This document shows, in pieces, positions 33,615 through 47,954 of a DNA stretch of 64,000 bases. The number at the start of each line of letters is the position of its first letter. The first letter of the stretch is position 1. The stretch spans positions 124,001 through 188,000 of IMG/VR virus record IMGVR_UViG_3300021963_000021, one strand, 5' to 3'. Made by a program: the position numbers and the translations under genes. The notes below the pieces were generated by a model that saw only the letters and a list, made by a program, of their open reading frames with translations, had not been told where the DNA came from and did not search any database.

Positions 33615-34045
33615 GAAACCTCAGACTTTCCTTTACTCAACGGAGTGACATTAATGAACCCTGCGTTTACACGCTCGGGCTCTGCTACTCCGTCATCGGC
33701 GAGCATGTTTCTAACAATATCACGGAACCAACGATCGACAATTTCTTCGTCAGCGTCGCCATCGAATCCGTAACCTTCTTGTTTTAATTGTAACACAAAT
33801 AATTCGTTCCAGTCAAGCTCAAAAAAACCGTTGCGTATATTATCCTTGTTAACATGAGTATCTAAAACGGATACCCAAGGTTCACCTTTTCTAGTAGCAC
33901 GTTCTTTTGGAGTCAGTTTAGCGAGTTCTTCTGCTTCTTTGGCTTTAAGTGCTTCTCCTTCGGCAACTTTCTTTTCTTGTTCTAATCTTGCTTTGTCTGC
34001 CTCTAATTTAGCAATACCTGTAATTTTTTTAAACCAATCTTTCAT
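33611..34045 (-). CDS. Hypothetical protein (likely start MKDWFK, TAATG-coupled to queE)
   Basis: Stop/start overlap at 34043-34047. Confidence 0.6.
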   Translation of the reverse strand: MKDWFKKITGIAKLEADKARLEQEKKVAEGEALKAKEAEELAKLTPKERATRKGEPWVSVLDTHVNKDNIRNGFFELDWNELFVLQLKQEGYGFDGDADEEIVDRWFRDIVRNMLADDGVAEPERVNAGFINVTPLSKGKSEVS

Positions 34046-34905
34046 TATGTACCCCACTCATTTTTAAATAACGGCACCTGTAAGCGGTCACTATAACGTA
34101 AACCATGTTTCATTGCCATAATAGCTACCGCTTTATTGTTTAATGCGTAAACACTTTCAACACCACCGACTGGCATTAGATAAACGTGTCCTTTAAATCC
34201 AGCGGCACGATATTCGCTTGCGGCTTTAAGCGCATAGTCGCGATCTTCTTCTGTGGCAATAACAAATTTCAAGTATGCTGTACCAACTTCTTCATACTCA
34301 CAAACAACCTCTGGAAGAATTGCTTCTTCCCACTTCTCACCACTACAAGGAAGTTTAGCACTGACACTGAATGTAACTTCTCTAGTGAAGTCTAAGTTAG
34401 GCATCTGCCACTGTAATAGATAGTCTTTAAATTCTGGACTTAGTTTTTGAGTACCATTTGTTTCAAAAGTAATTTCTTTCAATCCAGACATCTTAGGATT
34501 ATCTAGCAAGTCTGGATAAGCACGTTGCCAACCTAGCAATGGCTCGCCACCTGTAATTACGAGATGTTCGTCTAACCATTCATTATGTGGAAGGATTTCC
34601 ATAATTCGATCTGCTATAGCATCGCTTGTGAGCATTGGACTAAGGTCTTTGAATCTTGGATCCCAACTTGCGTAACTGTCACAGCCTGTACTAACAAGTG
34701 GAAGTTCTTCATATTTTGTAAATGGTTTTAAAGTATGTGCTAACGCAATGGTGTCAACTTCGTCACTTAGTTCACCACGTGGCATTCCGAAACCAGCACA
34801 TTTAAAGTTACAACCAAATGTACGTAAGAAAACAGAAGGCACACCCATATAGCGTCCTTCACCTTGTATGCTGTAAAACAGCTCTGCGATTTTGATTTTG
34901 CTCAT
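34045..34905 (-). CDS. queE: 7-carboxy-7-deazaguanine synthase (radical SAM)
   Basis: ELFYSIQGEGRYMGVPSVFLRTFGCN..C..CDS, VITGGEPLL, FETNGT, SDRLQ. Likely start ATG 34905. Confidence 0.88.
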   Translation of the reverse strand: MSKIKIAELFYSIQGEGRYMGVPSVFLRTFGCNFKCAGFGMPRGELSDEVDTIALAHTLKPFTKYEELPLVSTGCDSYASWDPRFKDLSPMLTSDAIADRIMEILPHNEWLDEHLVITGGEPLLGWQRAYPDLLDNPKMSGLKEITFETNGTQKLSPEFKDYLLQWQMPNLDFTREVTFSVSAKLPCSGEKWEEAILPEVVCEYEEVGTAYLKFVIATEEDRDYALKAASEYRAAGFKGHVYLMPVGGVESVYALNNKAVAIMAMKHGLRYSDRLQVPLFKNEWGT

Positions 34906-34911
34906 GTTTAT

Positions 34912-34941
34912 ATTATACACTCATTTCTTTAATTTTGTCAA
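34912..34941 (-). promoter_or_regulatory. Sigma70-type promoter TTGACA-18-TATAAT for queE
   Basis: Consensus hexamers at 34941-34936 and 34917-34912; ATG 6 nt downstream. Confidence 0.75.
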
Positions 34942-35509
34942 CTATACTTTTGAAAATAAATTCATTACCTTCTTTGGTATAATGATTAACATCACCACGG
35001 TTACTTGGCCAATACTCTGAAAAATCTAAATGATTCAATTCGTGACCAAAATGACTGCTGGCACTAGTATGGTCTAATGCTAGATATAGTGTTTGAACAT
35101 TTCTATCTATTTCACTGCGCATCAATCTATAGATATCTTCTTGATACTGTTCATCATAATGATGTTTAAACCAATTTAATGCTGTTACTAAACTTTCGTT
35201 TGATTTGTCTTGATTGTTTTCTAAATCATTAAAGATTAGATCACAGTTTTCGTGTAGCCCTTTTCTTTTTATAGGATGAGTGGGCGTGTGTACACGAAAG
35301 GGACTGGTATGACTAACAATCACTAGATTAAATTCTTTTGTGTTATTATTTTCTATTTGTTTTAAGATCTTATATTCACCAACACCTGCCTGCGCTACGT
35401 TTTTAACTGAATATTCTTTAGACAATAGATCTGCCCAACCAGGATACTCGCCGTTCCATTTGGCAGCAAAACTATCTCCGGCTAGCAGTATTTTTATTTT
35501 TTTAGCCAT
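34913..35509 (-). CDS. SGNH/GDSL-like hydrolase or acyltransferase
   Basis: LLAGDSFA, NVAQAGVG, terminal DVNHY. Confidence 0.65.
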   Translation of the reverse strand: MAKKIKILLAGDSFAAKWNGEYPGWADLLSKEYSVKNVAQAGVGEYKILKQIENNNTKEFNLVIVSHTSPFRVHTPTHPIKRKGLHENCDLIFNDLENNQDKSNESLVTALNWFKHHYDEQYQEDIYRLMRSEIDRNVQTLYLALDHTSASSHFGHELNHLDFSEYWPSNRGDVNHYTKEGNEFIFKSIVDKIKEMSV

Positions 35510-36309
35510 GGGATGAAACTTTCAGCTATCATGCGATGATAATCTTCGTTGTAATGTTCGTTGTCTGGAAGAAAGAATTTAGTATGATCGATAAACTTTT
35601 TACGAAAATAAGTTTCAACTGTTTGTTCGGAAATTTTAGTAGATTTTAATTTTGCGTAGTAATCTAATTTTTCCGGAAACTTAACACGATCAGTCATGTT
35701 AAACAGATACAGTTTACAGCCGTGTTCGTGGCACATAGTATCCATAACAAGTATATCTTTAAAAAAGTCTCTCTGTTCAAGATGTGTATTCAACTCAAAG
35801 AATAGTTTAACATCCATGTACGAATCTTTTCTAAGATCTGGTTTTATAAGACCGCTGGCATAATTAAAATTAATGTCTGCCATTCTTCCAAAATCTTCGT
35901 AAGTGGGTTTATTTAGAAGTTGGAATCTGTCATCTTTAAAAATCGTATCTTGGTATATGTCTACTAATCCGTGCTTGTTTTTATAAAATTCAGTAAAGTA
36001 ATCTGAACCAATAACATCAGCAGATAGTGTTTCATTGAATGCTAAGATAAAACGATTCCAGCTGGCTAGCAGTACAAACACTTCGTCGGTATCTGGATGT
36101 TTATCTAACATTGTTCTAAGCCAGTCTGTATATACTTTGTTTGCTGCTCCGGGAATAGCATACACTGACACTTGTTTGTTATTTTCTTTTGCGTAGAATT
36201 CTGCGTAGTTGTTGTCATTCCATAGGGAGTAACTACCAGGTCCCATCTTGCCTGGTTCTGTTATATAACCGCAGGTGTGACTATCGCCGAGAAATATTGC
36301 TCTACTCAT
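35494..36309 (-). CDS. SGNH/GDSL-like hydrolase or acyltransferase
   Basis: IFLGDSHT, AIPGAAN, terminal DNEHY. Confidence 0.65.
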   Translation of the reverse strand: MSRAIFLGDSHTCGYITEPGKMGPGSYSLWNDNNYAEFYAKENNKQVSVYAIPGAANKVYTDWLRTMLDKHPDTDEVFVLLASWNRFILAFNETLSADVIGSDYFTEFYKNKHGLVDIYQDTIFKDDRFQLLNKPTYEDFGRMADINFNYASGLIKPDLRKDSYMDVKLFFELNTHLEQRDFFKDILVMDTMCHEHGCKLYLFNMTDRVKFPEKLDYYAKLKSTKISEQTVETYFRKKFIDHTKFFLPDNEHYNEDYHRMIAESFIPWLKK

Positions 36310-36503
36310 TGAATACCTTCGCTTAACAGCAATCTACACATTAGCGCATCTTGTTCTGTTTTAAAATGAAACTTCATACATTCTGTGCTGACTTCTGTTG
36401 TATACCGTGTACCTGGTAAACCAAAGTGTTCCATAACGCTAGCACAGGTTTCATTCCACCAAATGTCTTTTTGATTTTGCCAGGGCACGTTTATTGTAAT
36501 CAT
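36306..36503 (-). CDS. Hypothetical protein
   Basis: 65 aa, ATGA-coupled. Confidence 0.55.
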   Translation of the reverse strand: MITINVPWQNQKDIWWNETCASVMEHFGLPGTRYTTEVSTECMKFHFKTEQDALMCRLLLSEGIQ

Positions 36504-36703
36504 TCTGGTACTTGTCTAAATCTAGTAATGAAGCTTTCTAAATAACAGCTATATTCTTTGTTGTTATCTGGATCTTCAGGATCAATAACTACATTTTCTT
36601 TTCTGTAATGTACCCAGGTGTGATCATGTATATCAATTACGTGTATCACACGAAACTTTTGACTAGTTGAACCTTCCCACAATGTACCTTCTTTAACGAT
36701 CAT
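36500..36703 (-). CDS. Hypothetical protein
   Basis: 67 aa, ATGA-coupled. Confidence 0.55.
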   Translation of the reverse strand: MIVKEGTLWEGSTSQKFRVIHVIDIHDHTWVHYRKENVVIDPEDPDNNKEYSCYLESFITRFRQVPE

Positions 36704-37092
36704 TTTTCGCCCTTTCGATAGTTACCTTTTCCTGGGATAGTGTTTCGAACACCGCCCACAGGATCTTCTACATCACCTTTGCGTCTTGGAATGAGATGTA
36801 CATGCGGATACATTACAGTCTGACCAGCAGCTTCACCCCAATTAAGACCAATATTAAATCCGTCCCATTCGCCAATGGCTACCATTTCTTTTCCGTGCTT
36901 GAAAGCATCGGCAAAGCAATCTTCAATAACTCCGTCGGCAGAGTATTGAGGAACGAAAAGAAGATGCCCGGGTGTACAAGGATATTTGTCCTCGAAAACC
37001 ACAACATGGAAGTCCTCCCGGATCTTTTCTGTCCATGGCGCTACGCCATTGGCCGCGGCATCTTCTAAAGTGTAATATTGTATCTTACTCAT
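36700..37092 (-). CDS. HIT-family nucleotide hydrolase
   Basis: DKYPCTPGHLLFVP..FNIGLNWGEAAGQTVMYPHVHLIPR. Confidence 0.9.
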   Translation of the reverse strand: MSKIQYYTLEDAAANGVAPWTEKIREDFHVVVFEDKYPCTPGHLLFVPQYSADGVIEDCFADAFKHGKEMVAIGEWDGFNIGLNWGEAAGQTVMYPHVHLIPRRKGDVEDPVGGVRNTIPGKGNYRKGEK

Positions 37093-37316
37093 CTTGAAAA
37101 GTCCTTGCGCTCTTGCGGTAGCGCATCTTCTTTAACAACAAACTCTCGTCCTAGCATACTGCCGACGTAGACTTTGGTGTTTTCTTTATATACCATTCGT
37201 ATCTTAACAGTTTGTAACGCTACTTCTAGGAAAGCCTTTGGCTTGTGTCCTAGTATATGAGCATCGAGGTCTTTGCCGTTATCAGTACAACGTATTTTTA
37301 TTTTCGAATCAATCAT
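37089..37316 (-). CDS. Hypothetical protein
   Basis: 75 aa, ATGA-coupled. Confidence 0.55.
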   Translation of the reverse strand: MIDSKIKIRCTDNGKDLDAHILGHKPKAFLEVALQTVKIRMVYKENTKVYVGSMLGREFVVKEDALPQERKDFSR

Positions 37317-37810
37317 TTAGTCCACCAATCTTCGTATGGAAAATCAATCCATATATTACGTTCTGCTTTATTAATTTCTTCCCCGGTGAAATCCATTTTA
37401 ACTTTACAGCTCGATGCTAGGTTATCAAACATCACAGCAAATTTCACATTGTTATTCCACACTTCGTTCCAGCGTGTGTGATCGGGCAAACAATTCGCTT
37501 GCCAGTCGTCCATGATCCAATTAAGTGTAGCACCTGTATCGTTGATATCGTCGGCAATTAAGATATTCTTTTCTTCGAACGCATCTTCTGCCATCCAGAG
37601 ATTGCTTTCGCAATCGTCACCATCTCTTAACTGTACTTTAATTGTTTGGCAAGGAATATTAAAATAGTGGCTAATCATTACAGCTGGCAGCAGCCCGCCT
37701 CGGGTTATTCCAACCACATAGTCGGGTTTCCAATCAGATAAACTAATATCTCTACAGATCTTATTGATCAACGCTTGGTACTGTAACCAGCTTACGTTAT
37801 ATTTTTCCAC
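37313..37810 (-). CDS. Type I phosphoribosyltransferase (xanthine/guanine PRT-like)
   Basis: VVGITRGGLLPA, ILIADDINDTGAT PRPP loop, WIDFPYE. Confidence 0.88.
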   Translation of the reverse strand: MEKYNVSWLQYQALINKICRDISLSDWKPDYVVGITRGGLLPAVMISHYFNIPCQTIKVQLRDGDDCESNLWMAEDAFEEKNILIADDINDTGATLNWIMDDWQANCLPDHTRWNEVWNNNVKFAVMFDNLASSCKVKMDFTGEEINKAERNIWIDFPYEDWWTK

Positions 37811-38270
37811 TCTCTAATTTCCTTACGGCAATATATTCCTCATGTTGAATCCATTTGTTATTGACTAGGAAACCCCAATCACGTTTATGTGGACCGGGCA
37901 TAAACAATGTCCAGGCTGTTACACCTTCTTTTAATTCAATGCGATGATAGCTTGTTGGCTTACAAATACGAAAATGCCCAGGGCCTCTCCAGTGGCGTAT
38001 CTCGCCAATCTTTTGGCCAATACTATTAAACTGTGGAACCCATTCATAGTACCCGCCTTTCAAAATTAGTGTAGCATATGGCCAAGGATGATCATGTACA
38101 TCGTCGGGATCGCCTTTTAAAAACTTGTGTAGAAACACATTAAAAGGAAACCAAGAACGATCTTTTAGAAAAAGGTAATACCTTTCTAAGTAAGGCTCAT
38201 TACTTTGCCTATCCATAATAATACGCTTGCGGCCAATGCTATCAAGCCAATTTAGAAAACGGTAAAACAT
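37797..38270 (-). CDS. Cupin-fold protein
   Basis: HDHPW..ILKGGYYE..YHRI..AWTLF metal-binding cupin pattern. Confidence 0.65.
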   Translation of the reverse strand: MFYRFLNWLDSIGRKRIIMDRQSNEPYLERYYLFLKDRSWFPFNVFLHKFLKGDPDDVHDHPWPYATLILKGGYYEWVPQFNSIGQKIGEIRHWRGPGHFRICKPTSYHRIELKEGVTAWTLFMPGPHKRDWGFLVNNKWIQHEEYIAVRKLESGKI

Positions 38271-38277
38271 TATATCC

Positions 38278-38511
38278 TCATTTTTTAGGTTTTGTTGCTT
38301 CTGGTGGTGTGTCAGCGGTTAATGGTCTTCCTTGATCATCATAATGAATATATGTGTCAATGTATCGTACCATACGAACCGGAACCCAATATGCCCTTAG
38401 TAATTTGTTAATACCAATAGCTGTAACGACAATTAATAGGACAGTTAGACAGCCAACAAATGTACCGCCAAACATTGACAGACCTGTAAGTATTGCTGAG
38501 CATTCATTCAT
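38278..38511 (-). CDS. Small membrane protein
   Basis: One long hydrophobic segment; SD AAGGA. Confidence 0.55.
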   Translation of the reverse strand: MNECSAILTGLSMFGGTFVGCLTVLLIVVTAIGINKLLRAYWVPVRMVRYIDTYIHYDDQGRPLTADTPPEATKPKK

Positions 38512-38524
38512 ATATTTCCTTTAG

Positions 38525-39349
38525 TTAGCGTGGAGCAAATTCTTGTTGAAGTTTAATATTATCCATGAACTCTTTTTTAGTTCCTGGATCATCTTTAAAC
38601 GCACCTTTTAATACTGTAGTCTGCGTTAAAGAACTGTGTGCCATAATACCGCGATTCTCACAGCAACCATGTGTTGCCTGTACATAGACTGCTACATTTT
38701 CTGAGTCAGTGGCTTTGCTAATCTCGCGGGCAATGTCGTTACAAAGTTCCTCCTGGAGAGTACCACGTCTTGCACACCACTGTGCGATGCGTGTGTACTT
38801 TGAGAGTCCAATGAGTTTTTGTGCGGCAATAATACCAATATAAGCAACGCCAGTAACGGGTTGATGATGATGGCTACACATACTGCGAAGCTCACTGCGA
38901 ACCACAAGCATACCTTCGTAGCGGTCCTCCGAGTCATTTGGGAAAGCGGTTGCGTCTGGTGCTGGGTCATACCTACCTGCCATTATTTCATTAAAGTACA
39001 TCTTAGCAAGCCTGCGGGCTGTGCCTTGACTGTTAGGATCATTTTCACGGTCAATTAGTAGCGTATCTAACACACGTTCAAACGCTTCTGTTGCTTCGTC
39101 GATAAGTTTTGCTTTATCTTCTTCAGTGACATAGTCACTGATATTGTCACCGGCCCAGAAGCGTTTTTTATCACGCTTCAATTTCGCACGAATAGCATCA
39201 CCTAAATAGCCTTCTGAATATCCTTTGTCGGACATCATTTCACCTGCTTTAACGTACACTTGCTTTTCTAATGGTACGTATTTTTCTTCAACGAACTTTT
39301 TGTCTAACGGTTCGTTGAGAACAGGATCTGGTGTAAATTCTTTTGTCAA
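38525..39349 (-). CDS. folE: GTP cyclohydrolase I
   Basis: SMCSHHHQP, IGLSKYTRI, LQEEL, HGCCENRG; TTG start with SD GGAG. Confidence 0.93.
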   Translation of the reverse strand: MTKEFTPDPVLNEPLDKKFVEEKYVPLEKQVYVKAGEMMSDKGYSEGYLGDAIRAKLKRDKKRFWAGDNISDYVTEEDKAKLIDEATEAFERVLDTLLIDRENDPNSQGTARRLAKMYFNEIMAGRYDPAPDATAFPNDSEDRYEGMLVVRSELRSMCSHHHQPVTGVAYIGIIAAQKLIGLSKYTRIAQWCARRGTLQEELCNDIAREISKATDSENVAVYVQATHGCCENRGIMAHSSLTQTTVLKGAFKDDPGTKKEFMDNIKLQQEFAPR

Positions 39350-39389: not shown

Positions 39390-40454
39390 TTATTTTAAAT
39401 TCTTTAGAAGATTTTCGCAACTGAAGAAGTTGTTTTTTAATTCTTCTACCTGTTTATTTAGGCTAGGTAAGAATTTTTCATAATTTTCCATGTACTGGAT
39501 TATCTTATGACACACTTCTTTTCTATGAACTTCATAGGATTCGAATGATTCTGTCCATTCGCTAGGATATTTGAATGGATCAAATGCCATTTCACTGTAG
39601 CTGAGTCTATCAGGAACCATAGGAATAGCATCTACAACTGCCCCTTCGTACCAACTGATACCTAGGGTTTCTTGTAGATTAGCACTGAATACTAGTTTAG
39701 CTTCACCTAGCATATTATGATATTCGTTCTTGGTCAACGGATATTCTTGGCATACTTTAAATTCGTATTGTGGAAGATGCTTTTTTAAATCAAGAAATAT
39801 ATCTAGCTGCTTTTCTGGAGCAATACGATGTGGGAATAGAATTAAGTTTTTCTTTTCCATTCCTTTATACATCATAAGAGCATTAGTCATATACTCCATT
39901 GGCCAGCCTGTGCGTATAACCTTACCGTCAAAGTCTGCGCCTGAAATAACTTTAGTTCCAAATAGATTTTCAAAGAACATCTTAATATGGAAGTTTGTGG
40001 CAAAGTAGTTGTGGTCAAACGCTTCGTAAAAACTTTTCTCAGCGTGTCTAACCCAAGGCTTGTTGCCAACAAGACGTCCTAGGAAGTCTTGAGGATCATA
40101 ACTGCCAGCATGCCACAGGCCATGAGTGACTACAGGAATATCCAGCAATTCACTCATGTACTTTAAGTTTATGATACCAGGGTGCCAAGCATCAGTAAAA
40201 ATAAAATGATCCCCAGGCTTAATTGCTCCGGCGCAAAATAAACGACCAATCTGCTCAACCTGACTAGACTTGTATATATTAGTCCCGCCAAAATTAAGAA
40301 AGGCCCCAGGAGTAGTGGCACTAGGAATATCCGTAGGGCCAGAGATAACTTGAACATTGTGTCCTGCCTTTCGTAGAAGTTCAGGTACATGAGTCTTCCA
40401 TTGACCCGTGTACCTGGTTTCAACCGCTTCTAGATCAACGAGAAAAACGGTCAT
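39390..40454 (-). CDS. GT-B fold glycosyltransferase (likely start MTVFLV at 40454)
   Basis: ILFPHRIAPEKQ, VFSANLQETLGISWYEGAVVDAIPMVPDRLSYSEM (GT-B E-x7-E-like region). Confidence 0.75.
   Translation of the reverse strand: MTVFLVDLEAVETRYTGQWKTHVPELLRKAGHNVQVISGPTDIPSATTPGAFLNFGGTNIYKSSQVEQIGRLFCAGAIKPGDHFIFTDAWHPGIINLKYMSELLDIPVVTHGLWHAGSYDPQDFLGRLVGNKPWVRHAEKSFYEAFDHNYFATNFHIKMFFENLFGTKVISGADFDGKVIRTGWPMEYMTNALMMYKGMEKKNLILFPHRIAPEKQLDIFLDLKKHLPQYEFKVCQEYPLTKNEYHNMLGEAKLVFSANLQETLGISWYEGAVVDAIPMVPDRLSYSEMAFDPFKYPSEWTESFESYEVHRKEVCHKIIQYMENYEKFLPSLNKQVEELKNNFFSCENLLKNLK
39392..39420 (-). promoter_or_regulatory. Possible sigma70 promoter TTGCGA-17-TAAAAT for folE
   Basis: Near-consensus hexamers with a 17-nt spacer. 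Confidence 0.45.
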
Positions 40455-40704
40455 TGTTATATCTCGGTTTATTACCTTGGTAAGGTTTGCGTTCACCGTT
40501 GTTTCGATCTACCCAAGGACGCTTTGGGCGTTTACTATACAGATAGTTCTGATAGTTTTTTGAATCCTTGCGGTACAAATCCGCAGGGTTGAAATCGCAG
40601 AGTTCAATTCTGCAGTAGTCCAAATACGCTTCAAGATCTTCAAAGATCTTGACAACGTCAGGACGGTTAGTGAAGTAGGAATAGTCCTTGTAGTTCTTAG
40701 ACAT
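40435..40704 (-). CDS. Hypothetical protein
   Basis: 89 aa with SD GAGG and a basic tail. Confidence 0.6.
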   Translation of the reverse strand: MSKNYKDYSYFTNRPDVVKIFEDLEAYLDYCRIELCDFNPADLYRKDSKNYQNYLYSKRPKRPWVDRNNGERKPYQGNKPRYNNDRFSR

Positions 40705-40713
40705 TTTAGCCTC

Positions 40714-41109
40714 TTAGTATTTGATAAACGAACCATTTTCTCCGTCTTCGGAGATCTCAATCCAAATCTCGCGATCTGGATACTTTAGCGAAATAATGTT
40801 GAACAAATCGTCCGACATCATTTCACAACTCTTGTAGTCAAGGCTTAGAATGGAACCTTGACCATTATACAGCGACTCGAGCCATCGTTTGAACTGGATG
40901 AACTCGATGTCCCTGTCATTATGGAGCACACTGATCCACACCCTGAAATGAAAGATGTGGCGATGAGGGTGACCCAAAAACGATACATCATATTCATCTC
41001 CTGTAGCTAAGTTGGGATCTGTAAGAGCCGCAGGATATTTATGAATACCTTCCTTTTGAAAGGTAACCCAGATCATTTTGTTAGGTCTAATATCTTGTTT
41101 AATGATCAT
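40714..41109 (-). CDS. QueD-paralogous T-fold protein, DpdL-like (putative CDG decarboxylase)
   Basis: GIHKYP..LGHPHRHIFHF..DIEFIQFK..SCE..ISEDGENG. Matches the LxxxHRHxF signature I recall for DpdL (from memory, not searched). Confidence 0.65.
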   Translation of the reverse strand: MIIKQDIRPNKMIWVTFQKEGIHKYPAALTDPNLATGDEYDVSFLGHPHRHIFHFRVWISVLHNDRDIEFIQFKRWLESLYNGQGSILSLDYKSCEMMSDDLFNIISLKYPDREIWIEISEDGENGSFIKY

Positions 41110-41408
41110 GCCTTTAGTCCTTCCATAGTAATGATCTTACCGATCTCGTCACCTAGATCTTTATCGTCTGTGATAATATAAAGACCATTATTGCTGGTGT
41201 CACGCTTCATGTCGTATTTGCGTGTTTCGATGATAGTTCCGCCGTTTGCTCGGAATACCTTAAGGGTAAATCCGTTTGCGTCAATGGACCTTTCACCGGT
41301 AGAAAGCACTGCGGCTGTTCCCATTTTTATTCCTTCATCTTGGTATTTGTGGCTGTTATCCCACATATCGCGGGTCTTTTTATACAGCCATTTATCAAAC
41401 CATTTCAT
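41106..41408 (-). CDS. Hypothetical protein
   Basis: 100 aa, ATGA-coupled. Confidence 0.6.
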   Translation of the reverse strand: MKWFDKWLYKKTRDMWDNSHKYQDEGIKMGTAAVLSTGERSIDANGFTLKVFRANGGTIIETRKYDMKRDTSNNGLYIITDDKDLGDEIGKIITMEGLKA

Positions 41409-41947
41409 TTAATAATCTCATCGTTAGTGTAAGCACTCCACGGTGTGAACTTACTGCGGTCTTTTAAATCGTGTAGGCTATGACACCACACGCCGGGATT
41501 GGTTGCTTTAAAATCTTTGTCATCGATTTTAAGCATTGTATTGTAATTCCATAGTTTGATATATGGGATAGGTATACGGATTTGCGGAATAAACATCTCG
41601 TAGTCGTTTAAGCAGCCGTCATTGAACTCTTCTACTTGATTTAGTGGAATATCTAGACTACACCAATACCCTTGATCGAGAAAATGTGTAATCATATCTT
41701 CCCATGCCTTGTGCTCATCATATCCTGTAGGATTGAAACTATGATTAGCACCAAAGAAGATATGTTTAATATGTTTGCTAGTGTCGAGCAAACAATTCAT
41801 ATCACCAAGAATGTGGTCAATGACTTGTTCATTTTGAACACCAGTTACAAACAATGTACGCATACCAAACGTGGGAGTATTCTCGACTTCGTTACCGATG
41901 AAAAAATTCACATCTTCTAATGTGCCAGTGGAATAATCACGCTTCAT
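41405..41947 (-). CDS. Hypothetical enzyme-like protein within the deazaguanine locus
   Basis: 180 aa with motif-like blocks GNEVENTP, HIFFGANHSF, KIDDKDFKATNPGVWCH. Confidence 0.6.
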   Translation of the reverse strand: MKRDYSTGTLEDVNFFIGNEVENTPTFGMRTLFVTGVQNEQVIDHILGDMNCLLDTSKHIKHIFFGANHSFNPTGYDEHKAWEDMITHFLDQGYWCSLDIPLNQVEEFNDGCLNDYEMFIPQIRIPIPYIKLWNYNTMLKIDDKDFKATNPGVWCHSLHDLKDRSKFTPWSAYTNDEIIK

Positions 41948-42546: not shown

Positions 42547-44079
42547 TCAATTGGCTGTTTGCTCTAGAAATTCGTGTTCTAATTCTTCGAGCATATCTTC
42601 GTCTAACACAGGCATTGCTGACACTTGTGACACAGACTTGTCTAATACTACTTCATCTGATTCAAAGTGTTTGTTAAACGTGTTGTTGGCGTTTCCACCA
42701 CGTAGACGCATACCCATCATTTTGTTCAGCATAGGTCTAGCATCTTCAATCATCTGCATTGGAGTTTCGCTGGTAAACAATTCTTCAACGAAGTTATTGA
42801 AGTACAGGATGTTACGAGGTACCCATTCAGAGTATTCATCGCTCTTATCCATGTCTTTGAGATTCTTCCATTGACGCCAGTTAGGACTTACTTTGGCAGT
42901 TTCAATATCCATTAAATTGTTAGCACGTTGTACAGCAACGATGTGACAATATGTATTATGTGCCATCATTAGCGCATAACCAAAGCTGTCCCAAGAAGTT
43001 TTTCCTTCTTTGCCGATTTTGTTTAACATTCCCGGCTTGTACCAGCAGATGTCTCCGATGTTAAGGCGCCTGCCAATTTCTGATTCAAACGGGAAGGGGA
43101 TGTTAAAAGCCTGGCTAATTGCTTTGTTGTCTGGGGCCTTGTCCATGATGACTGACCAGCGTTTGTTGGTGTGCTGGGCATTTGTGTAGACAAGCCCGTG
43201 GGCTGTAGCAATGAAGGGTGATGCGCAATCAAAAGATATGGTAAAGTTTTCATTCACGTGCTTCCTTACTTGGCGTTGGATTAAAGTTAAGTAACAAGAC
43301 CAATCTAACTGTGCTGTACCCAAGAAGTGCATCCAGTTACGATCGTCTAACAGTTTCTCATCACGCAGGATAATGAGACGTTTTAGTGCGACTTCCATAT
43401 CACACATATTCTTACCGCCCATTGCCCACCCTTCTGTAGGCAAGTGTTTAACTGCTTCGTACCAAGCCTGTGCTGTTTCCCAGTCACTGCCTTGTAGAAC
43501 GTTAAGGAATTTAGTTTGACCTAAGCGATTACGTATAAAGTAATCATTGTTGTGAAGTGTTTTATCTAAACAGTCTTGAAAACTCTTTAATCCTGTCTTT
43601 GGACTATGGATATGATCGCTAGCCCATGTCGGGACGTCTAATAACATTGACCAATCAGCAGTTAATTCTAGCCAGTTAAGGATGCTGTCACGAGTTTTAT
43701 TGGCAGCAGCACCTTCAAAGTTCATCCAATCAAACTTAAGAACACCTTTACCGATCTGATAGCCGCCGGAGTCGCCTACAATAAGTGTGTTGTTACGATC
43801 TCTACTTTGAATCATAGCATCTTGAATCATTGTCTTTTCAAGATCTAATTGTGCGTGGCCTGCTGAGTAAAGACCATATTTGTAAGTAAAGTATCCTTGC
43901 TCAGGATTAAGGAAGTTCATTCCTTCAATGCCGCGATCAAACCCTTGCGGAATACGATCGTTAGGAACAAACTCGCTGAATCTTTGTTTGCTTACATATG
44001 TTGAATAAAAACAACTAATCGCAGGCAAATAGACTGCGTAGTCTTTCTGTAGGGGTGTTAAATTAACTGGTGGTCTCAT
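42547..44079 (-). CDS. TGT-fold deazaguanine transglycosylase-like protein (divergent DpdA, DpdA3-like)
   Basis: TGT motifs in order: GDSGGYQ, MLLDVP, LNVLQG, GWAMGG, MHFLG, SFDCASP, LMMAHN. No CxCxxC zinc site of tRNA TGTs. Lies near folE/queE. Confidence 0.75.
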   Translation of the reverse strand: MRPPVNLTPLQKDYAVYLPAISCFYSTYVSKQRFSEFVPNDRIPQGFDRGIEGMNFLNPEQGYFTYKYGLYSAGHAQLDLEKTMIQDAMIQSRDRNNTLIVGDSGGYQIGKGVLKFDWMNFEGAAANKTRDSILNWLELTADWSMLLDVPTWASDHIHSPKTGLKSFQDCLDKTLHNNDYFIRNRLGQTKFLNVLQGSDWETAQAWYEAVKHLPTEGWAMGGKNMCDMEVALKRLIILRDEKLLDDRNWMHFLGTAQLDWSCYLTLIQRQVRKHVNENFTISFDCASPFIATAHGLVYTNAQHTNKRWSVIMDKAPDNKAISQAFNIPFPFESEIGRRLNIGDICWYKPGMLNKIGKEGKTSWDSFGYALMMAHNTYCHIVAVQRANNLMDIETAKVSPNWRQWKNLKDMDKSDEYSEWVPRNILYFNNFVEELFTSETPMQMIEDARPMLNKMMGMRLRGGNANNTFNKHFESDEVVLDKSVSQVSAMPVLDEDMLEELEHEFLEQTAN

Positions 44080-45224: not shown

Positions 45225-47897
45225 TCACTCAAAATCAAACAATTTACTGAATGTGTTATCACTGCGTGTTGAACTAATGTCCCATTCCAACACTCCGATT
45301 AGGTTTTCTAACTTTTCATCGATAACTGTGGTTTCCATTTCGGCATCATCGAACGGTAGTTCTTTGAACCATTGCGGCAAACGTAGTTCGTCTACCGGAT
45401 ACGCTACTGAAGTATAGCCCATTGGGTTATCTCTGACTTTACAAACAATCACTTTAGCACCGTCAGTGATGCCCATTGAGTACTTGTCATCCATCATGCG
45501 TTTGAGAGTATTCCAATTAAGACTTGCTCTAACATGACCAGGCATGTTAGTCTTACCAGCCTTCTTCTCTTTTGCGGCGTATTCTGTAATGTTGTTGGCA
45601 CGTTTGGGAGAGCCTTTCTCCCAACCTGGGCGAGTTTTAAATTCTGTACGGAAATTAGTGATGTGTTCTAGTACTTCTTCTTTTGAAGCACCGGTTAGCA
45701 CTTTTTCTAATACATCACTTAAGAAGTTTTGAATGACTACTGGAGTATCACTGCGTTTAAGGTCTAGACCCATGGCCTTGATCTTACCAGGTTTACCATC
45801 TACATCACTGCGCTTGCCTTCTTTGTCATAGTAAAGCACAGCATAACGCTTCTTAGTAATGAACAGACCTTTTGACGCAACAATTTCACGACCTGCTTTA
45901 ATAACTTCGCCACGAGTCTTTGGACAATGGAACTGTTCTGTCATCATTTTAGGAAAACTCTGATTGACTTCGTCGGCTATTTGATCATACAACTGTACTA
46001 CAGTTTCTTTACTCCAAGGCAAGTGCCCAGATTCAATTTCTTTTCTCAGTACAGGGTATGCTGAAAAGTAGCAGGAGTCAGTATCACCATAGATAACAGC
46101 CTTGCCTTTGTAATCATATTCGCCACAAATGATTTCATTTATCTTTGAGGCCATGTGTTTGACAATAGTCCTGCCTGTGAGTGTAGTGGATTGACCGATT
46201 CTATTATCAAAGAAGCGGCAACCAGGATTAAGAATAGCGCCATAAAGACTATTGAGGTTAATTTTCTTAACAAGCTGTCGTTTGTCCCAGTATTCTTCTT
46301 CAATTTTATTTCCACTTGCTATACATTCCTTTAGTTTAGCTTGCATTTCTTTACGTTCAGCATACCAACGCTTTAGCAGTCCTGGAATAATACCATCTTT
46401 TTCATAGGTAAAGATAGTTCCGTTAGAACTGATCATCCAGGGCTGACCAGAATCAAATATGAGATCATTGATCTGTGCGCCAGTTAATGTATCACTGCCG
46501 CCATTTTCCCAGTCAATGACGATTTCTTTAGCAATGTTTCGTTCCATTACATACTCATACTCCAAGCTACCGAACATTCCTTCCCATGCTGCCGCAAAAG
46601 ATTTACCATGCCGCACCATTTGATCGTCAATATAGTTCTTTGTGTAGTCTGGACGAAGTTGACCGACAATGGTTTCCGGTCCCATGTTTAGCGCACGAAT
46701 CGCAGACGGATACAGTGAGTTCAAGTCAACTGATCCGATCCATTCGTGAATGCCTTTCTTGGGATAAGCAACATAAGCACCTGCTGCCTGTGTGGATTCT
46801 GTGTCGTCACGTCTCTTACGATTCGGTACAACAAAGCCTCTACGATGTGCTTCGTTGATAATTGCCTGCTCAGTAACAGCAACCGCACCCATCGCAGTCT
46901 GTAGTAACACAGTATTTTCGTGGGCAATCTTGTTAGCTAGATCCAAAAACTGTAGTTTCTTATCTAACTTGTCTAGCAGTGCTGTGTCTTGTCTGTTGTA
47001 TTCGATGAATTTTTTAAAGTCGTTGTTGTAAAGTTGATCCAGTGTACCTTCGTAGACTGTTTTGTTTTCACCGATCTCCATTTCACCAATAGCATCTAGT
47101 CGATATGTGTGTCGTTCTTCATATGTGTACTTTCTATAAAGTTCGAGACTATCAAGATGTACACGCCCTACTAGATCATATGTGACAGCCTGGCGACCAA
47201 ACTTTTCAAACTCACGTTTTTTAGGAAACTGATTCCATAAACAGAATCGACGTGTATCTTCTTTTGACAACGCTTTTGTTACACGGTTAACGGTGTATGG
47301 AATATCGAAACCTTCTGAATTCCAACCACTTAACACATCAGCATCTTCAATGAGTGTTAAGAAGTTGTCAAGAAGATCTGCTTCGTTGTCAAAAAGATAT
47401 GTGTTTGGAAATTCTGCTACTGCCTTTTCTGCTTCTGCCATTGACATAGTCTTTGGAGGTACAGCAAGACAGATTAATGTGTTAAGCCATTGTAAGTGAA
47501 CAGCAATCGCAGTGATCGGCATAAACGCATCATCTGGTGAAGCATACCCACGTTCGGGATCAAAGTCTACTTCAATGTCAAAGAATGCTACGTTTAGTTT
47601 TGGGGAATCTTGATTAAGATAGTTTTCTTCAAGACAACGGAATATAGGATTAATATCAGATTCATAAAGTTTCTGACTTCCGTGTATTTTTTGTTCTTTG
47701 TGGAATTCTTTTAGATTTTTACAAGTAACACGACTCAGCGGAATGCCGTGAGTACTAACATACTTGCCTTTAGGATCTTGATAATAAAAAAGATATTTGG
47801 CAGCATATTCTTTAAACTGTCTGCGACCATCTTTATCTCTTTCGACAACAGAGATAAGATCACTGTCTCTGTCGTAGTAAGCATCTACGTAACTCAT
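45225..47897 (-). CDS. Family B DNA polymerase (gp43-like); likely start MSYVDA at 47897
   Basis: Exo motifs FDIEVD, GWNSEGFDIPY, YNRQD; pol motifs SVDLNSLYPS, KINLNSLYG, YGDTDS, KKRYA; SD AAGGAG. Confidence 0.95.
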   Translation of the reverse strand: MSYVDAYYDRDSDLISVVERDKDGRRQFKEYAAKYLFYYQDPKGKYVSTHGIPLSRVTCKNLKEFHKEQKIHGSQKLYESDINPIFRCLEENYLNQDSPKLNVAFFDIEVDFDPERGYASPDDAFMPITAIAVHLQWLNTLICLAVPPKTMSMAEAEKAVAEFPNTYLFDNEADLLDNFLTLIEDADVLSGWNSEGFDIPYTVNRVTKALSKEDTRRFCLWNQFPKKREFEKFGRQAVTYDLVGRVHLDSLELYRKYTYEERHTYRLDAIGEMEIGENKTVYEGTLDQLYNNDFKKFIEYNRQDTALLDKLDKKLQFLDLANKIAHENTVLLQTAMGAVAVTEQAIINEAHRRGFVVPNRKRRDDTESTQAAGAYVAYPKKGIHEWIGSVDLNSLYPSAIRALNMGPETIVGQLRPDYTKNYIDDQMVRHGKSFAAAWEGMFGSLEYEYVMERNIAKEIVIDWENGGSDTLTGAQINDLIFDSGQPWMISSNGTIFTYEKDGIIPGLLKRWYAERKEMQAKLKECIASGNKIEEEYWDKRQLVKKINLNSLYGAILNPGCRFFDNRIGQSTTLTGRTIVKHMASKINEIICGEYDYKGKAVIYGDTDSCYFSAYPVLRKEIESGHLPWSKETVVQLYDQIADEVNQSFPKMMTEQFHCPKTRGEVIKAGREIVASKGLFITKKRYAVLYYDKEGKRSDVDGKPGKIKAMGLDLKRSDTPVVIQNFLSDVLEKVLTGASKEEVLEHITNFRTEFKTRPGWEKGSPKRANNITEYAAKEKKAGKTNMPGHVRASLNWNTLKRMMDDKYSMGITDGAKVIVCKVRDNPMGYTSVAYPVDELRLPQWFKELPFDDAEMETTVIDEKLENLIGVLEWDISSTRSDNTFSKLFDFE

Positions 47898-47907
47898 TTT
47901 TTTCTCC

Positions 47908-47954
47908 TTGCGATTTTTGGCTCGCAAATACCAAACTAGTCATTTATGGCTGAC
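47908..47954 (-). promoter_or_regulatory. Twin RNA hairpins with near-identical 8-nt loops abutting the polymerase RBS (putative translational operator)
   Basis: mRNA: GUCA-GCCAUAAA-UGAC ... UUGCGA-GCCAAAAA-UCGCAA-GGAG-A7-AUG. Confidence 0.65.

What the first reader, a model, noticed from the sequence alone, without database searches (positions are those of the whole stretch)
36700..38270. PRTase + HIT + cupin trio suggests a nucleotide-level (pre-replicative) route for the modified base
Seen: a guanine/xanthine-PRT-like gene, a HIT hydrolase and a cupin are translationally coupled between folE and queE. Known: PRTases attach free bases to PRPP, and HIT enzymes hydrolyse nucleotide phosphoramidates/polyphosphates. 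Inference: the base could be salvaged to a nucleotide and incorporated by the adjacent polymerase, with HIT shaping the pools. That would give near-total G replacement rather than sparse post-replicative exchange.
Basis: inference. Interest (0 to 1): 0.6.

Follow-up and report, generated by a model that had tools for sequence, protein, structure and literature searches.

The report
Purine salvage gene in deazaguanine operon
A freshwater jumbo phage carries a purine phosphoribosyltransferase, a HIT hydrolase and a cupin-like gene inside its 7-deazaguanine DNA-modification operon.

Summary
The three genes are real. All lie on the minus strand between FolE and QueE and are joined by 4-14 nt overlaps: a cupin-like gene (37797-38270), a PRTase (37313-37810) and a HIT gene (36700-37092). 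The window is part of a 364-kb uncultured jumbo phage related to Pseudomonas phage PA5oct.

- a 510-aa protein with a TGT/DpdA fold (Z 19.6 to solved TGTs), which keeps the DSGGYQ and FDC motifs;
- a DpdL homologue with the published LxxxHRHxF signature;
- a GT-B glycosyltransferase.

There is no QueC. The default reading is therefore a phiST-like pathway that makes the free base (FolE/QueD/QueE/DpdL give 7-deazaguanine), which the DpdA-like enzyme then inserts into DNA.

The three genes are not one unit. Cupin and HIT homologues occur mostly in phages not known to modify guanine, and some relatives of this phage lack them. The PRTase is different: 21 of 22 cultured-phage records that carry it also encode QueE, and it sits inside deazaguanine operons in at least five lineages.

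Its sequence signature and its cellular relatives point to ordinary 6-oxopurine salvage. I favour recycling of excised guanine into GTP for FolE.

The parts
45225..47927 (-). Family B DNA polymerase (900 aa) at the upstream end of the gene array
   Evidence: PF00136 4e-37 and PF03104 7e-20. It is 48-50% identical to both halves of the split PA5oct polymerase.
42547..44079 (-).
   Evidence: AF2 model with alignment A2: pLDDT 83.7. Foldseek: the top 50 hits are all TGT, E=2.4e-9, prob 1.0. VIA-align: Z 19.6, 301 residues aligned. D103-S-G-G-x-Q108, HFLG and F283-D284-C-A-S-P are invariant. It is 43% identical to PA5oct gp168. PF01702 gives no hit, but it also misses the known phiST DpdA3.
41405..41947 (-). 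Conserved 180-aa protein of unknown function that travels with the DpdA-like gene
   Evidence: 33% identical to ACP17 gp122. Present in 21 of 21 full-length related loci. No family hit.
40714..41109 (-). DpdL homologue (131 aa), the proposed CDG decarboxylase and a QueD paralogue
   Evidence: 54% identical to ACP17 gp125 and PA5oct gp166, and 33% to phiST DpdL. It carries the published signature LxxxHRHxF as LGHPHRHIF (motif from PMC10516641).
39390..40496 (-). GT-B glycosyltransferase (368 aa). It is not a DpdA.
   Evidence: 36 of 61 family representatives hit PF00534. PDB 8xsg glucosyltransferase E=1.4e-4. EX7E-like motif QETLGIxxxE. Homologues: PA5oct gp167 and ACP17 gp124.
38525..39349 (-). 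GTP cyclohydrolase I (FolE)
   Evidence: PF01227 6e-40.
38278..38511 (-). 77-aa ORF, poorly conserved, possibly not a gene
   Evidence: Found in only 2 of 70 related loci. No family hit.
37797..38270 (-). Cupin-like metalloprotein (157 aa), in the phage 'cysteine dioxygenase' family
   Evidence: phrog_4786 6.5e-36. Invariant HxHPW, GxYxE and H motifs. Present in 20 of 21 full loci. Homologues occur in 102 cultured phages, mostly not known to modify guanine.
37313..37810 (-). Type I purine PRTase (165 aa), XGPRT/GpT-like
   Evidence: PF00156 6.4e-14. PDB 1vdm, 4trb, 4z1o and 1a95. R37-G-G, D87-D88-x-x-D91-T-G-x-T and W154 are invariant or nearly so. Present in 21 of 21 full loci.
37089..37316 (-). 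75-aa ORF between PRTase and HIT, function unknown
   Evidence: Conserved at 48-84% identity in 31 of 70 related loci. No family hit.
36700..37092 (-). HIT-family protein (130 aa) with a variant triad
   Evidence: PF01230 1.3e-9. PDB 1y23 7e-9 and Ap4A phosphorylase 3wo5 5e-7. The motif is [YW]-P-H-[VI]-H-[LM]-I-P-R in all 47 homologues, so the first His of HxHxH is replaced.
34913..36703 (-). Four variable ORFs (67, 65, 271 and 198 aa) between HIT and QueE
   Evidence: The 271-aa and 198-aa ORFs give only sub-threshold GDSL-lipase hits and occur in 3 of 21 full loci.
34045..34920 (-). QueE-like radical SAM enzyme (CDG synthase)
   Evidence: phrog_2076 5.3e-51. 50% identical to BUCT-ZZ01 QueE.

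Best explanation
The region is the middle of a phiST/PA5oct-type operon for modifying DNA with 7-deazaguanine.

FolE, QueD (encoded about 50 kb away in the genome) and QueE make the free base CDG from GTP. With no QueC, the DpdL homologue probably decarboxylates CDG to 7-deazaguanine. The 510-aa TGT/DpdA-fold protein then swaps that base for guanine in phage DNA after replication.

The PRTase is an ordinary 6-oxopurine phosphoribosyltransferase recruited to serve this pathway. Each exchange consumes one GTP-derived base and releases one free guanine. The PRTase turns that guanine, and purines from degraded host DNA, back into GMP. GMP becomes GTP and feeds FolE. Removing guanine also removes a competitor for the exchange reaction.

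The HIT protein and the cupin-like protein are accessory genes of this phage clade. I assign them no specific role in guanine replacement.

What is shown: gene identities, the TGT fold, the DpdL motif, synteny, and the co-occurrence figures. What is inferred: the PRTase substrate, the guanine-recycling role, the final base, and the extent of replacement.
For: 1. A base-exchange enzyme is present and conserved. The fold evidence is pLDDT 83.7 with every top hit a TGT (E=2.4e-9, Z 19.6). The DSGGYQ and FDC motifs are invariant. The gene is in 21 of 21 full loci. Iyer et al. 2021 already credit PA5oct with a 'deazaguanine synthesis/incorporation system' (PMC7824862).

2. The gene set matches phiST, whose DNA is 100% dDG. 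FolE, QueD, QueE and DpdL are present and QueC is absent (PMC10516641).

3. The PRTase looks like a canonical 6-oxopurine enzyme. It has the DDxxDTGxT motif with an invariant third Asp, the RGG loop and the stacking Trp, and all align with E. coli Gpt. That the third Asp marks 6-oxopurine PRTases and contacts N7 is my own knowledge of HGPRT/XGPRT.

4. Its closest cellular relatives (30-39% identity over the full length) sit in salvage contexts. In Ca. Actinomarina the gene is next to a PnrA/Bmp nucleoside ABC transporter. In Sphingosinicella it is next to adenosine deaminase.

5. The PRTase tracks GTP entry into the pathway. It lies directly upstream of FolE in immuto_2-6A and within two genes of FolE in BUCT-ZZ01 and L167. 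Among loci spanning GT to QueE, the counts are FolE+PRT+ 21, FolE-PRT- 5, FolE-PRT+ 1 and FolE+PRT- 0.

6. The pre-replicative signatures I searched for are largely absent from this genome: no guanylate kinase, HD or Nudix, and only a 25.6-bit MazG match far from the cluster.

7. Cupin and HIT are not specific to the pathway and some relatives lack them.
Against: - The PRTase substrate is untested.
- TubE, a purine-type PRTase that its authors aligned with Sulfolobus GpT 4Z1O, uses CDG. 4Z1O is also a top PDB hit for this PRTase.
- No DpdA3-type enzyme has been shown to act on DNA. Cui et al. could not reconstitute DpdA3, or dpdL plus dpdA, in E. coli and suggested that other enzymes may be needed.
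- DpdA3 clusters of phages with proven 100% replacement also carry nucleotide-level enzymes: a MazG/dUTPase-like gene in phiST, and a PRA-PH-like pyrophosphatase plus a P-loop kinase in immuto. Guanine recycling alone does not explain these.
- ACP17 and the Campylobacter phages have the pathway without this PRTase.
- The FolE/PRTase co-variation rests on related, non-independent contigs.
Confidence: 0.4

Rival explanations
1. The PRTase is TubE-like and joins CDG or 7-deazaguanine to PRPP. Host and phage kinases and the phage ribonucleotide reductase convert the product to 7-deaza-dGTP, which the adjacent family B polymerase incorporates. HIT trims the competing nucleotide pools. The DpdA-like enzyme is a back-up or serves another purpose.
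For: - TubE uses PRPP and CDG (PMC6112128) and belongs to the same GpT-like group as this PRTase's PDB neighbours.
- The PRTase is embedded in deazaguanine operons of at least five lineages, among them two groups with measured 100% replacement, phiST and immuto.
- The genome encodes a ribonucleotide reductase.
- Cui et al. could not obtain dDG from dpdL plus dpdA alone.
- Every complete base substitution with a known mechanism is pre-replicative (T4, S-2L, PBS2). This last point is my own knowledge.
Against: - A conserved TGT-fold enzyme with intact catalytic motifs would be redundant.
- No dGTP-clearing enzyme and no NMP kinase lies in or near the cluster.
- The Asp that contacts N7 is invariant, although 7-deazapurines have no N7.
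- TubE itself rejected 7-deazaguanine.
- The cellular relatives are in salvage contexts.
- ACP17 and the Campylobacter phages lack the PRTase.
Confidence: 0.2
2. Base exchange at the nucleotide level. The DpdA-like enzyme exchanges guanine for the deazapurine on free dGMP or dGTP rather than on DNA. A pyrophosphatase supplies dGMP and drains dGTP: MazG-like in phiST and immuto, perhaps HIT here. A kinase re-phosphorylates the product. The PRTase recycles the released guanine.
For: - Pyrophosphatase, kinase and PRTase genes lie beside DpdA3 in phages with 100% replacement.
- DNA transglycosylase activity of DpdA3 has never been shown.
- HIT enzymes cleave at the alpha-phosphate of nucleotides (family knowledge; nearest PDB matches are Hit, Fhit and Ap4A phosphorylase).
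Against: - This is pure inference with no precedent for a TGT-fold enzyme acting on mononucleotides.
- This genome has no kinase in the cluster.
- HIT is missing from 3 of 21 full loci and from PA5oct, phiST, immuto and ACP17.
- DpdA1, DpdA2 and bacterial DpdA act on DNA (PMC10516641).
Confidence: 0.1
3. The three genes are generic auxiliary metabolic genes that happen to be inserted in a variable stretch of the operon: purine salvage for nucleotide supply, a housekeeping HIT hydrolase, and an oxygenase-like protein of unknown role. None has a specific link to guanine modification.
For: - Cupin and HIT homologues are widespread in phages that have no deazaguanine genes nearby in the three records I inspected.
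- The interval between FolE and QueE varies among relatives.
- In phiST the PRTase sits beside the ribonucleotide reductase, about 17 kb from the modification cluster.
Against: For the PRTase this reading fails on the numbers. Of 22 cultured-phage records with a homologue, 21 are QueE-encoding phages from four independent groups, yet QueE occurs in only 223 of 50,697 records. The PRTase also lies inside the operon in PA5oct, immuto, BUCT-ZZ01, L167 and L172.
Confidence: 0.15

Closest known systems
Cellulophaga phage phiST dDG system: FolE, QueD, QueE, DpdL, DpdA3 (Cui et al. 2023, PMC10516641)
   Same: FolE, QueD, QueE and DpdL are present and QueC is absent. The DpdL signature LxxxHRHxF is present. 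The cluster lies next to the DNA polymerase. A homologous PRTase (30% identity) is encoded in the same genome.
   Different: The transglycosylase here is 510 aa and shows no detectable sequence similarity to the 259-aa phiST DpdA3. This operon adds a GT-B glycosyltransferase, a cupin-like gene and a HIT gene, and lacks the MazG/dUTPase-like gene of phiST. In phiST the PRTase is 17 kb away, next to the ribonucleotide reductase.
Pseudomonas jumbo phage PA5oct, gp173-gp159 (Wroclawvirus)
   Same: The gene order is syntenic: PolB, a structural gene, the TGT-like gp168 (43% identity), GT gp167 (41%), DpdL gp166 (54%), PRTase gp163 (29%), QueE gp162 and the exonuclease. PA5oct DNA resists restriction enzymes at G-containing sites (PMC12191111).
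   Different: PA5oct has no cupin or HIT gene. A short epimerase-like gp164 sits upstream of its PRTase. Its FolE is elsewhere in the genome and its PolB is split by a homing endonuclease. The chemistry of its modification has not been determined.
TubE/ToyH, deazapurine PRTases of tubercidin and toyocamycin biosynthesis (PMC6112128)
   Same: A purine-type PRTase encoded beside FolE, QueD and QueE homologues. Its authors aligned TubE with Sulfolobus GpT 4Z1O, which is also a PDB neighbour of the window PRTase.
   Different: TubE belongs to secondary metabolism and has no TGT/DpdA partner. Its product is a free nucleoside antibiotic. TubE rejects 7-deazaguanine. I could not obtain its sequence, so no direct comparison was made.
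E. coli Gpt (XGPRT) and archaeal GpT / P. horikoshii 1VDM purine PRTases
   Same: Similar size of about 150-165 aa, the RGG loop, the DDxxDTGxT motif and a C-terminal W-I-x-x-P-W segment.
   Different: Only 23% identical to Gpt. The match is far below the NCBIfam XPRT equivalog cut-off (41.6 against 138 bits). Most members of the clade carry an insertion of about 25 residues after the PRPP motif.
Pre-replicative base-substitution systems: T4 hmC, and the S-2L Z-genome genes PurZ, MazZ and DatZ (from my own knowledge)
   Same: The idea of a phage-made modified nucleotide incorporated by the phage polymerase. The PRTase, ribonucleotide reductase and polymerase genes are present.
   Different: No enzyme that clears the canonical dNTP and no dedicated NMP kinase was found near the cluster, and a post-replicative type of enzyme is present.

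Membership tests
Type I phosphoribosyltransferase (PF00156), 6-oxopurine (XGPRT/GpT-like) branch | Pfam score above the gathering cut-off | tested here: met
   52 bits against 26.3.
Type I phosphoribosyltransferase (PF00156), 6-oxopurine (XGPRT/GpT-like) branch | PRPP-binding motif (hydrophobic run, two acidic residues, xx, D, T/S, G, x, T) with the third Asp typical of 6-oxopurine PRTases, plus the RGG PPi loop | tested here: met
   ILIADDINDTGAT. D88, D91, G93, T95, G38 and G39 are invariant; D87 and R37 are nearly invariant. All align with E. coli Gpt. The meaning of the third Asp is from my own knowledge.
Type I phosphoribosyltransferase (PF00156), 6-oxopurine (XGPRT/GpT-like) branch | Equivalog-level match to xanthine/guanine PRTase (NCBIfam NF006613) | tested here: not met
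   41.6 bits against a cut-off of 138. It is a divergent relative, not an orthologue of Gpt.
Type I phosphoribosyltransferase (PF00156), 6-oxopurine (XGPRT/GpT-like) branch | Activity on guanine, xanthine or hypoxanthine rather than on 7-deazapurines | not testable with these tools
   Needs an enzyme assay.
HIT superfamily (PF01230) | Pfam score above the cut-off | tested here: met
   39 bits against 21.5.
HIT superfamily (PF01230) | Histidine triad HxHxHxx | tested here: inconclusive
   The motif is [YW]xHxHxx in all 47 homologues. The second His (the nucleophile in Hint and Fhit, from my own knowledge) and the third His are kept. The first His is replaced.
Cupin superfamily / cysteine-dioxygenase-like | Double-stranded beta-helix fold with the two cupin metal motifs | tested here: inconclusive
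   The motif-like HxHPW, GxYxE and H residues are invariant and phrog_4786 matches at 6.5e-36. There is no Pfam hit, no significant PDB hit, and the Atlas gives only leads of 0.78-0.81 to CDO_I.
TGT/DpdA transglycosylase superfamily (the 510-aa neighbour) | TIM-barrel TGT fold | tested here: met
   Foldseek E=2.4e-9, prob 1.0. VIA-align Z 19.6 over 301 residues. Every top hit is a bacterial, archaeal or human TGT.
TGT/DpdA transglycosylase superfamily (the 510-aa neighbour) | The two catalytic aspartates, in the DSGG(F/Y)Q and FDC motifs | tested here: met
   D103-S-G-G-x-Q108 and F283-D284-C are invariant in 20 sequences. Matching them to Z. mobilis Asp102 and Asp280 is by motif, from my own knowledge.
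TGT/DpdA transglycosylase superfamily (the 510-aa neighbour) | Sequence membership of PF01702 or of the published DpdA3 subfamily | tested here: not met
   There is no PF01702 hit, but the bona fide phiST DpdA3 is also missed. hhalign against phiST DpdA3 gives prob 3.5%. The match to ACP17 gp123 is weak, E=0.002 in a 13-sequence set. The subfamily is unassigned.
TGT/DpdA transglycosylase superfamily (the 510-aa neighbour) | Guanine exchange on DNA | not testable with these tools
   Needs an assay. It has not been shown for any DpdA3-type enzyme.
DpdL (proposed CDG decarboxylase) | QueD-like T-fold protein with LxxxHRHxF in place of CxxxHGH | tested here: met
   LGHPHRHIF. 33-54% identical to phiST and ACP17 DpdL.
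Pre-replicative modified-dNTP pathway | An enzyme that destroys the canonical dNTP, and a kinase for the modified NMP | tested here: not met
   No HD, Nudix or guanylate kinase was found. There is one 25.6-bit MazG-like match about 130 kb away. A HIT activity on dGTP is not excluded.
Pre-replicative modified-dNTP pathway | No post-replicative installing enzyme | tested here: not met
   A TGT/DpdA-fold gene lies in the same operon.

The most novel reading that the evidence does not exclude
In this large, globally distributed group of freshwater jumbo phages, and in the phiST, immuto and PA5oct groups, 7-deazaguanine enters DNA through the nucleotide pool. Either a TubE-like PRTase makes the deazapurine nucleotide, or the DpdA-like enzyme exchanges the base on free dGMP or dGTP while the PRTase recycles the guanine. 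This would be the first pre-replicative 7-deazapurine DNA pathway. It would overturn the current view that all such modifications are made after replication.
Probability: 0.25. Interest if true: 0.85.

Novelty: new variant of a known kind. Interest (0 to 1): 0.55.

Why it matters
How some phages replace every guanine with a 7-deazaguanine is unresolved. The enzyme credited with it, DpdA3, has never been reconstituted, and the 2023 reference study does not mention a PRTase.

This work shows that a purine PRTase is a recurrent part of exactly these operons. It also separates that gene from two bystander genes, and turns the pre- versus post-replicative question into a few clean assays in a culturable relative, PA5oct.

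Homologues of the cluster's genes number in the thousands in public metagenomes, and near-identical sequence turned up in sequencing runs from at least 17 studies. The chemistry therefore matters for the ecology of restriction evasion and for sequencing and phage-therapy work with such DNA.

Tried and rejected
1. I first took the 368-aa neighbour of FolE for the DpdA. A single-sequence AF2 model failed (pLDDT 35). The big representative search, followed by Pfam on 61 members and the PDB profile search, showed it is a GT-B glycosyltransferase. The DpdA idea was rejected for this gene.

2. The absence of PF01702 in the genome is not evidence that a DpdA is absent. The same search misses the known DpdA3 of phiST.

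3. Direct searches with phiST DpdA3 found nothing in this genome, ACP17 or PA5oct. hhalign of A2 against phiST DpdA3 was insignificant, and the PDB profile search with A2 was blank. Only the fold search settled the question.

4. For the cupin, phmmer and profile searches of the PDB gave nothing significant (the Cdc25 hits are spurious). hhalign against the 2OG oxygenase that sits in the analogous position in L167 was negative. The word search returned only close, unnamed relatives.

5. A PRTase tree was meant to test single against multiple recruitment. It was unresolved, with 18 of 25 forks open. The only hint is that the immuto PRTase groups with a Bacteroidota gene and E. coli Gpt (95/87), apart from the window's clade.

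6. The sequencing-run search found only assembled contigs and no raw or long reads, so it gave no evidence on base modification.

7. No TubE or ToyH sequence was available from any tool, so no direct comparison was made.

Full report
**What the window is.** The window is bases 124001-188000 of a 363,943-bp IMG/VR virus record that CheckV rates complete. From about 29 kb onwards all genes are on the minus strand. Synteny and 29-54% protein identities place the phage near Pseudomonas jumbo phage PA5oct. Homologues of its genes number in the thousands in public metagenomes. Near-identical sequence occurs in freshwater, riverine, estuarine and 'marine' metagenomes from at least 17 studies.

The PRTase (37313-37810) hits PF00156 at 6.4e-14, and the HIT gene (36700-37092) hits PF01230 at 1.3e-9. 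The 157-aa ORF at 37797-38270 has no Pfam hit. It matches the phage family phrog_4786 ('cysteine dioxygenase') at 6.5e-36 and has invariant HxHPW, GxYxE and H residues that resemble the cupin metal motifs. Its fold remains unconfirmed.

FolE (38525-39349) and QueE (34045-34920) flank the three genes. Successive genes overlap by 4-14 nt. The three are not contiguous: a conserved 75-aa ORF separates PRTase and HIT, and four more ORFs lie between HIT and QueE.

A few kb upstream in the same minus-strand gene array are three further pathway genes.

- *A DpdL homologue (40714-41109).* It is 54% identical to ACP17 gp125 and 33% identical to phiST DpdL. It carries the signature LxxxHRHxF, which Cui et al. 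use to tell DpdL from QueD (PMC10516641).
- *A GT-B glycosyltransferase (39390-40496, 368 aa).* I first suspected this was the DpdA. The evidence says otherwise: 36 of 61 family representatives hit PF00534, the family has an EX7E-like motif, and the profile matches the PDB glucosyltransferase 8xsg.
- *A TGT/DpdA-fold protein (42547-44079, 510 aa).* An alignment of 20 homologues shows invariant LGDSGGYQ, WAMGG, HFLGT and FDCASPF. These are the hallmark motifs of tRNA-guanine transglycosylase, including both catalytic aspartates; I matched them to TGT from my own knowledge. An AF2 model built on that alignment (pLDDT 83.7) matches only TGTs, with Foldseek E=2.4e-9 and prob 1.0 and VIA-align Z 19.6 over 301 residues.

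PF01702 does not detect the 510-aa protein, but it also fails on the known phiST DpdA3. The genome has QueD elsewhere and no QueC. The cluster is therefore a phiST-type pathway that makes the base from CDG, or from 7-deazaguanine after decarboxylation, and it has its own base-exchange enzyme. Iyer et al. 2021 had already noted a 'deazaguanine synthesis/incorporation system' in PA5oct. PA5oct DNA resists restriction at G-containing sites (PMC12191111).

**Are the three genes one unit?** No. I anchored a search on the DpdA-like gene and kept the 21 related contigs that span FolE to QueE. All 21 have the PRTase, 20 have the cupin-like gene, 18 have HIT and 5 have the 75-aa ORF. Contigs anchored on the PRTase include several without cupin or HIT.

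Outside this clade, cupin homologues occur in 102 cultured phages, mostly of Mycobacterium, Gordonia, Burkholderia, Xylella and Caulobacter. In the three I inspected they lie among replication or early genes with no deazaguanine genes nearby. HIT homologues occur mainly in actinophages. Neither gene is found in PA5oct, phiST, immuto or ACP17.

**The PRTase is different.** Homologues occur in only 22 of 50,697 phage records. Of these, 21 are QueE-encoding phages from four independent groups: PA5oct-like, phiST-like, immuto-like and BUCT-ZZ01. QueE itself is detectable in only 223 records. The gene usually sits inside the operon:

- PA5oct: gp163 lies next to QueE gp162.
- immuto_2-6A: gp211 lies directly upstream of FolE gp210 and five genes from the annotated DpdA.
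- BUCT-ZZ01: the order is QueE, PRTase, one ORF, QueD, FolE.
- Contig L167, binned as Rhodobacteraceae: the order is QueE, a 2OG oxygenase, PRTase, QueD, FolE, further genes, a formyltransferase, a kinase and QueF.
- A Persephonella MAG contig: a broken PRTase is followed by QueD, QueE and FolE.

The reference paper on these pathways does not mention phosphoribosyltransferases. I found no paper that links the two.

**What the PRTase most likely does.** Its sequence points to an ordinary 6-oxopurine enzyme. It has the RGG loop, the DDxxDTGxT motif with an invariant third Asp, and the stacking Trp, and all align with E. coli Gpt. In HGPRT and XGPRT that third Asp contacts N7 and separates these enzymes from adenine and orotate PRTases; this is my own knowledge. 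Its nearest solved relatives are purine PRTases.

Its closest cellular relatives sit next to a PnrA/Bmp nucleoside ABC transporter in Ca. Actinomarina and next to adenosine deaminase in Sphingosinicella. Both are purine-salvage contexts.

In the phage operons the gene keeps company with FolE, the step that consumes GTP. In this clade the two are gained and lost together: 21 loci have both, 5 have neither, 1 has the PRTase alone and none has FolE alone. These contigs are related, so the counts are not independent.

My preferred mechanism follows from this. Each exchange by the DpdA-like enzyme consumes one GTP-derived base and releases one guanine. The PRTase returns that guanine to GMP, then GTP, then FolE, and it removes a competing substrate of the exchange reaction. 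This step is inferred, not shown.

- TubE of tubercidin biosynthesis is a purine-type PRTase that joins PRPP to CDG, although it rejects 7-deazaguanine. Its authors aligned it with Sulfolobus GpT 4Z1O, which is one of this PRTase's top PDB neighbours.
- DpdA3 has never been reconstituted. dpdL plus dpdA gave no dDG in E. coli.
- The DpdA3 clusters of phages with proven 100% replacement carry other nucleotide-level enzymes: a MazG/dUTPase-like gene in phiST, and a PRA-PH-type pyrophosphatase plus a P-loop kinase in immuto.

Against it in this genome, I found no guanylate kinase, HD or Nudix gene, and only a 25.6-bit MazG-like match about 130 kb away. A ribonucleotide reductase is present. A PRTase tree meant to test single against repeated recruitment was unresolved.

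**HIT and the cupin-like protein.** The HIT family here has a fixed variant triad, [YW]xHxHxx. Its nearest structures are Hit/Hint, Fhit and Ap4A phosphorylase. It is probably an active nucleotide hydrolase or transferase, but its substrate cannot be inferred. I treat HIT and the cupin-like protein as accessory genes of this clade.

**Verdict.**

The link between the PRTase and deazaguanine synthesis is real and apparently unreported. The proposed three-gene module and the need for a nucleotide route are not supported, because a base-exchange enzyme sits in the same operon.

| Reading | Confidence |
|---|---|
| Base-level pathway with a guanine-recycling PRTase | about 0.4 |
| Base exchange at the nucleotide level | about 0.1 |
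| Unrelated auxiliary genes | about 0.15 |

The system is a new variant of a known kind.

Noticed in passing
window 39390-40496 (-): A GT-B glycosyltransferase is conserved beside the DpdA-like and DpdL genes in this clade, PA5oct (gp167), ACP17 (gp124), Sinorhizobium phage Phosso and BUCT-ZZ01. More distant homologues occur in Xanthomonas, Burkholderia and Erwinia jumbo phages. The family has 1,107 representatives at 50% identity. PA5oct also has a short NAD-epimerase-like gene (gp164) nearby. This may mean the modified base or the DNA is further glycosylated. 7-deazaguanine itself offers no obvious site for a sugar.
   Followed up: partly
window 42547-44079 (-): The TGT-fold protein is about twice the length of phiST DpdA3 and has a C-terminal helical extension from about residue 365; residues 458-497 are modelled with low confidence. 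It shows no detectable sequence similarity to DpdA3, so it may be a further DpdA subfamily. ACP17 gp123 (424 aa), in the same position, matches only weakly.
   Followed up: partly
genome G000:C1:214535-215086 (outside the window): The only QueD/PTPS homologue of the genome reads CSTLHGY where QueD has CxxxHGH, so the second zinc-binding His is replaced by Tyr. It is encoded about 50 kb from the rest of the pathway.
   Followed up: no
L177 (Flavobacterium phage immuto_2-6A) 8980-13142; L167 2194-5615: In the fdPreQ1-type clusters the PRTase travels with a P-loop AAA_28/thymidylate-kinase-like protein. In immuto there is also a PRA-PH (MazG-superfamily) pyrophosphatase between FolE and DpdA. These nucleotide-level enzymes sit inside clusters that are currently explained as purely post-replicative.
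   Followed up: partly
window 1-10875 (+): A single open reading frame of more than 3,600 aa runs off the 5' end of the window. It is followed by a long run of plus-strand genes, presumably the structural module. The strand switch falls near 29 kb.
   Followed up: no
window 45225-47927 (-) vs L003 989-6215: The family B polymerase is a single 900-aa gene here. In PA5oct it is split into two genes by a Hef-like homing endonuclease.
   Followed up: no
window 34913-36309 (-): Two ORFs (271 and 198 aa) with sub-threshold GDSL/SGNH-hydrolase hits lie between HIT and QueE. They occur in only a few relatives (3 of 21 full loci).
   Followed up: no
L172 243-975 (Persephonella MAG contig): A PRTase, QueD, QueE, FolE array in which the PRTase is split across two frames and QueD looks truncated. 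This is either a decaying copy or an assembly error.
   Followed up: no
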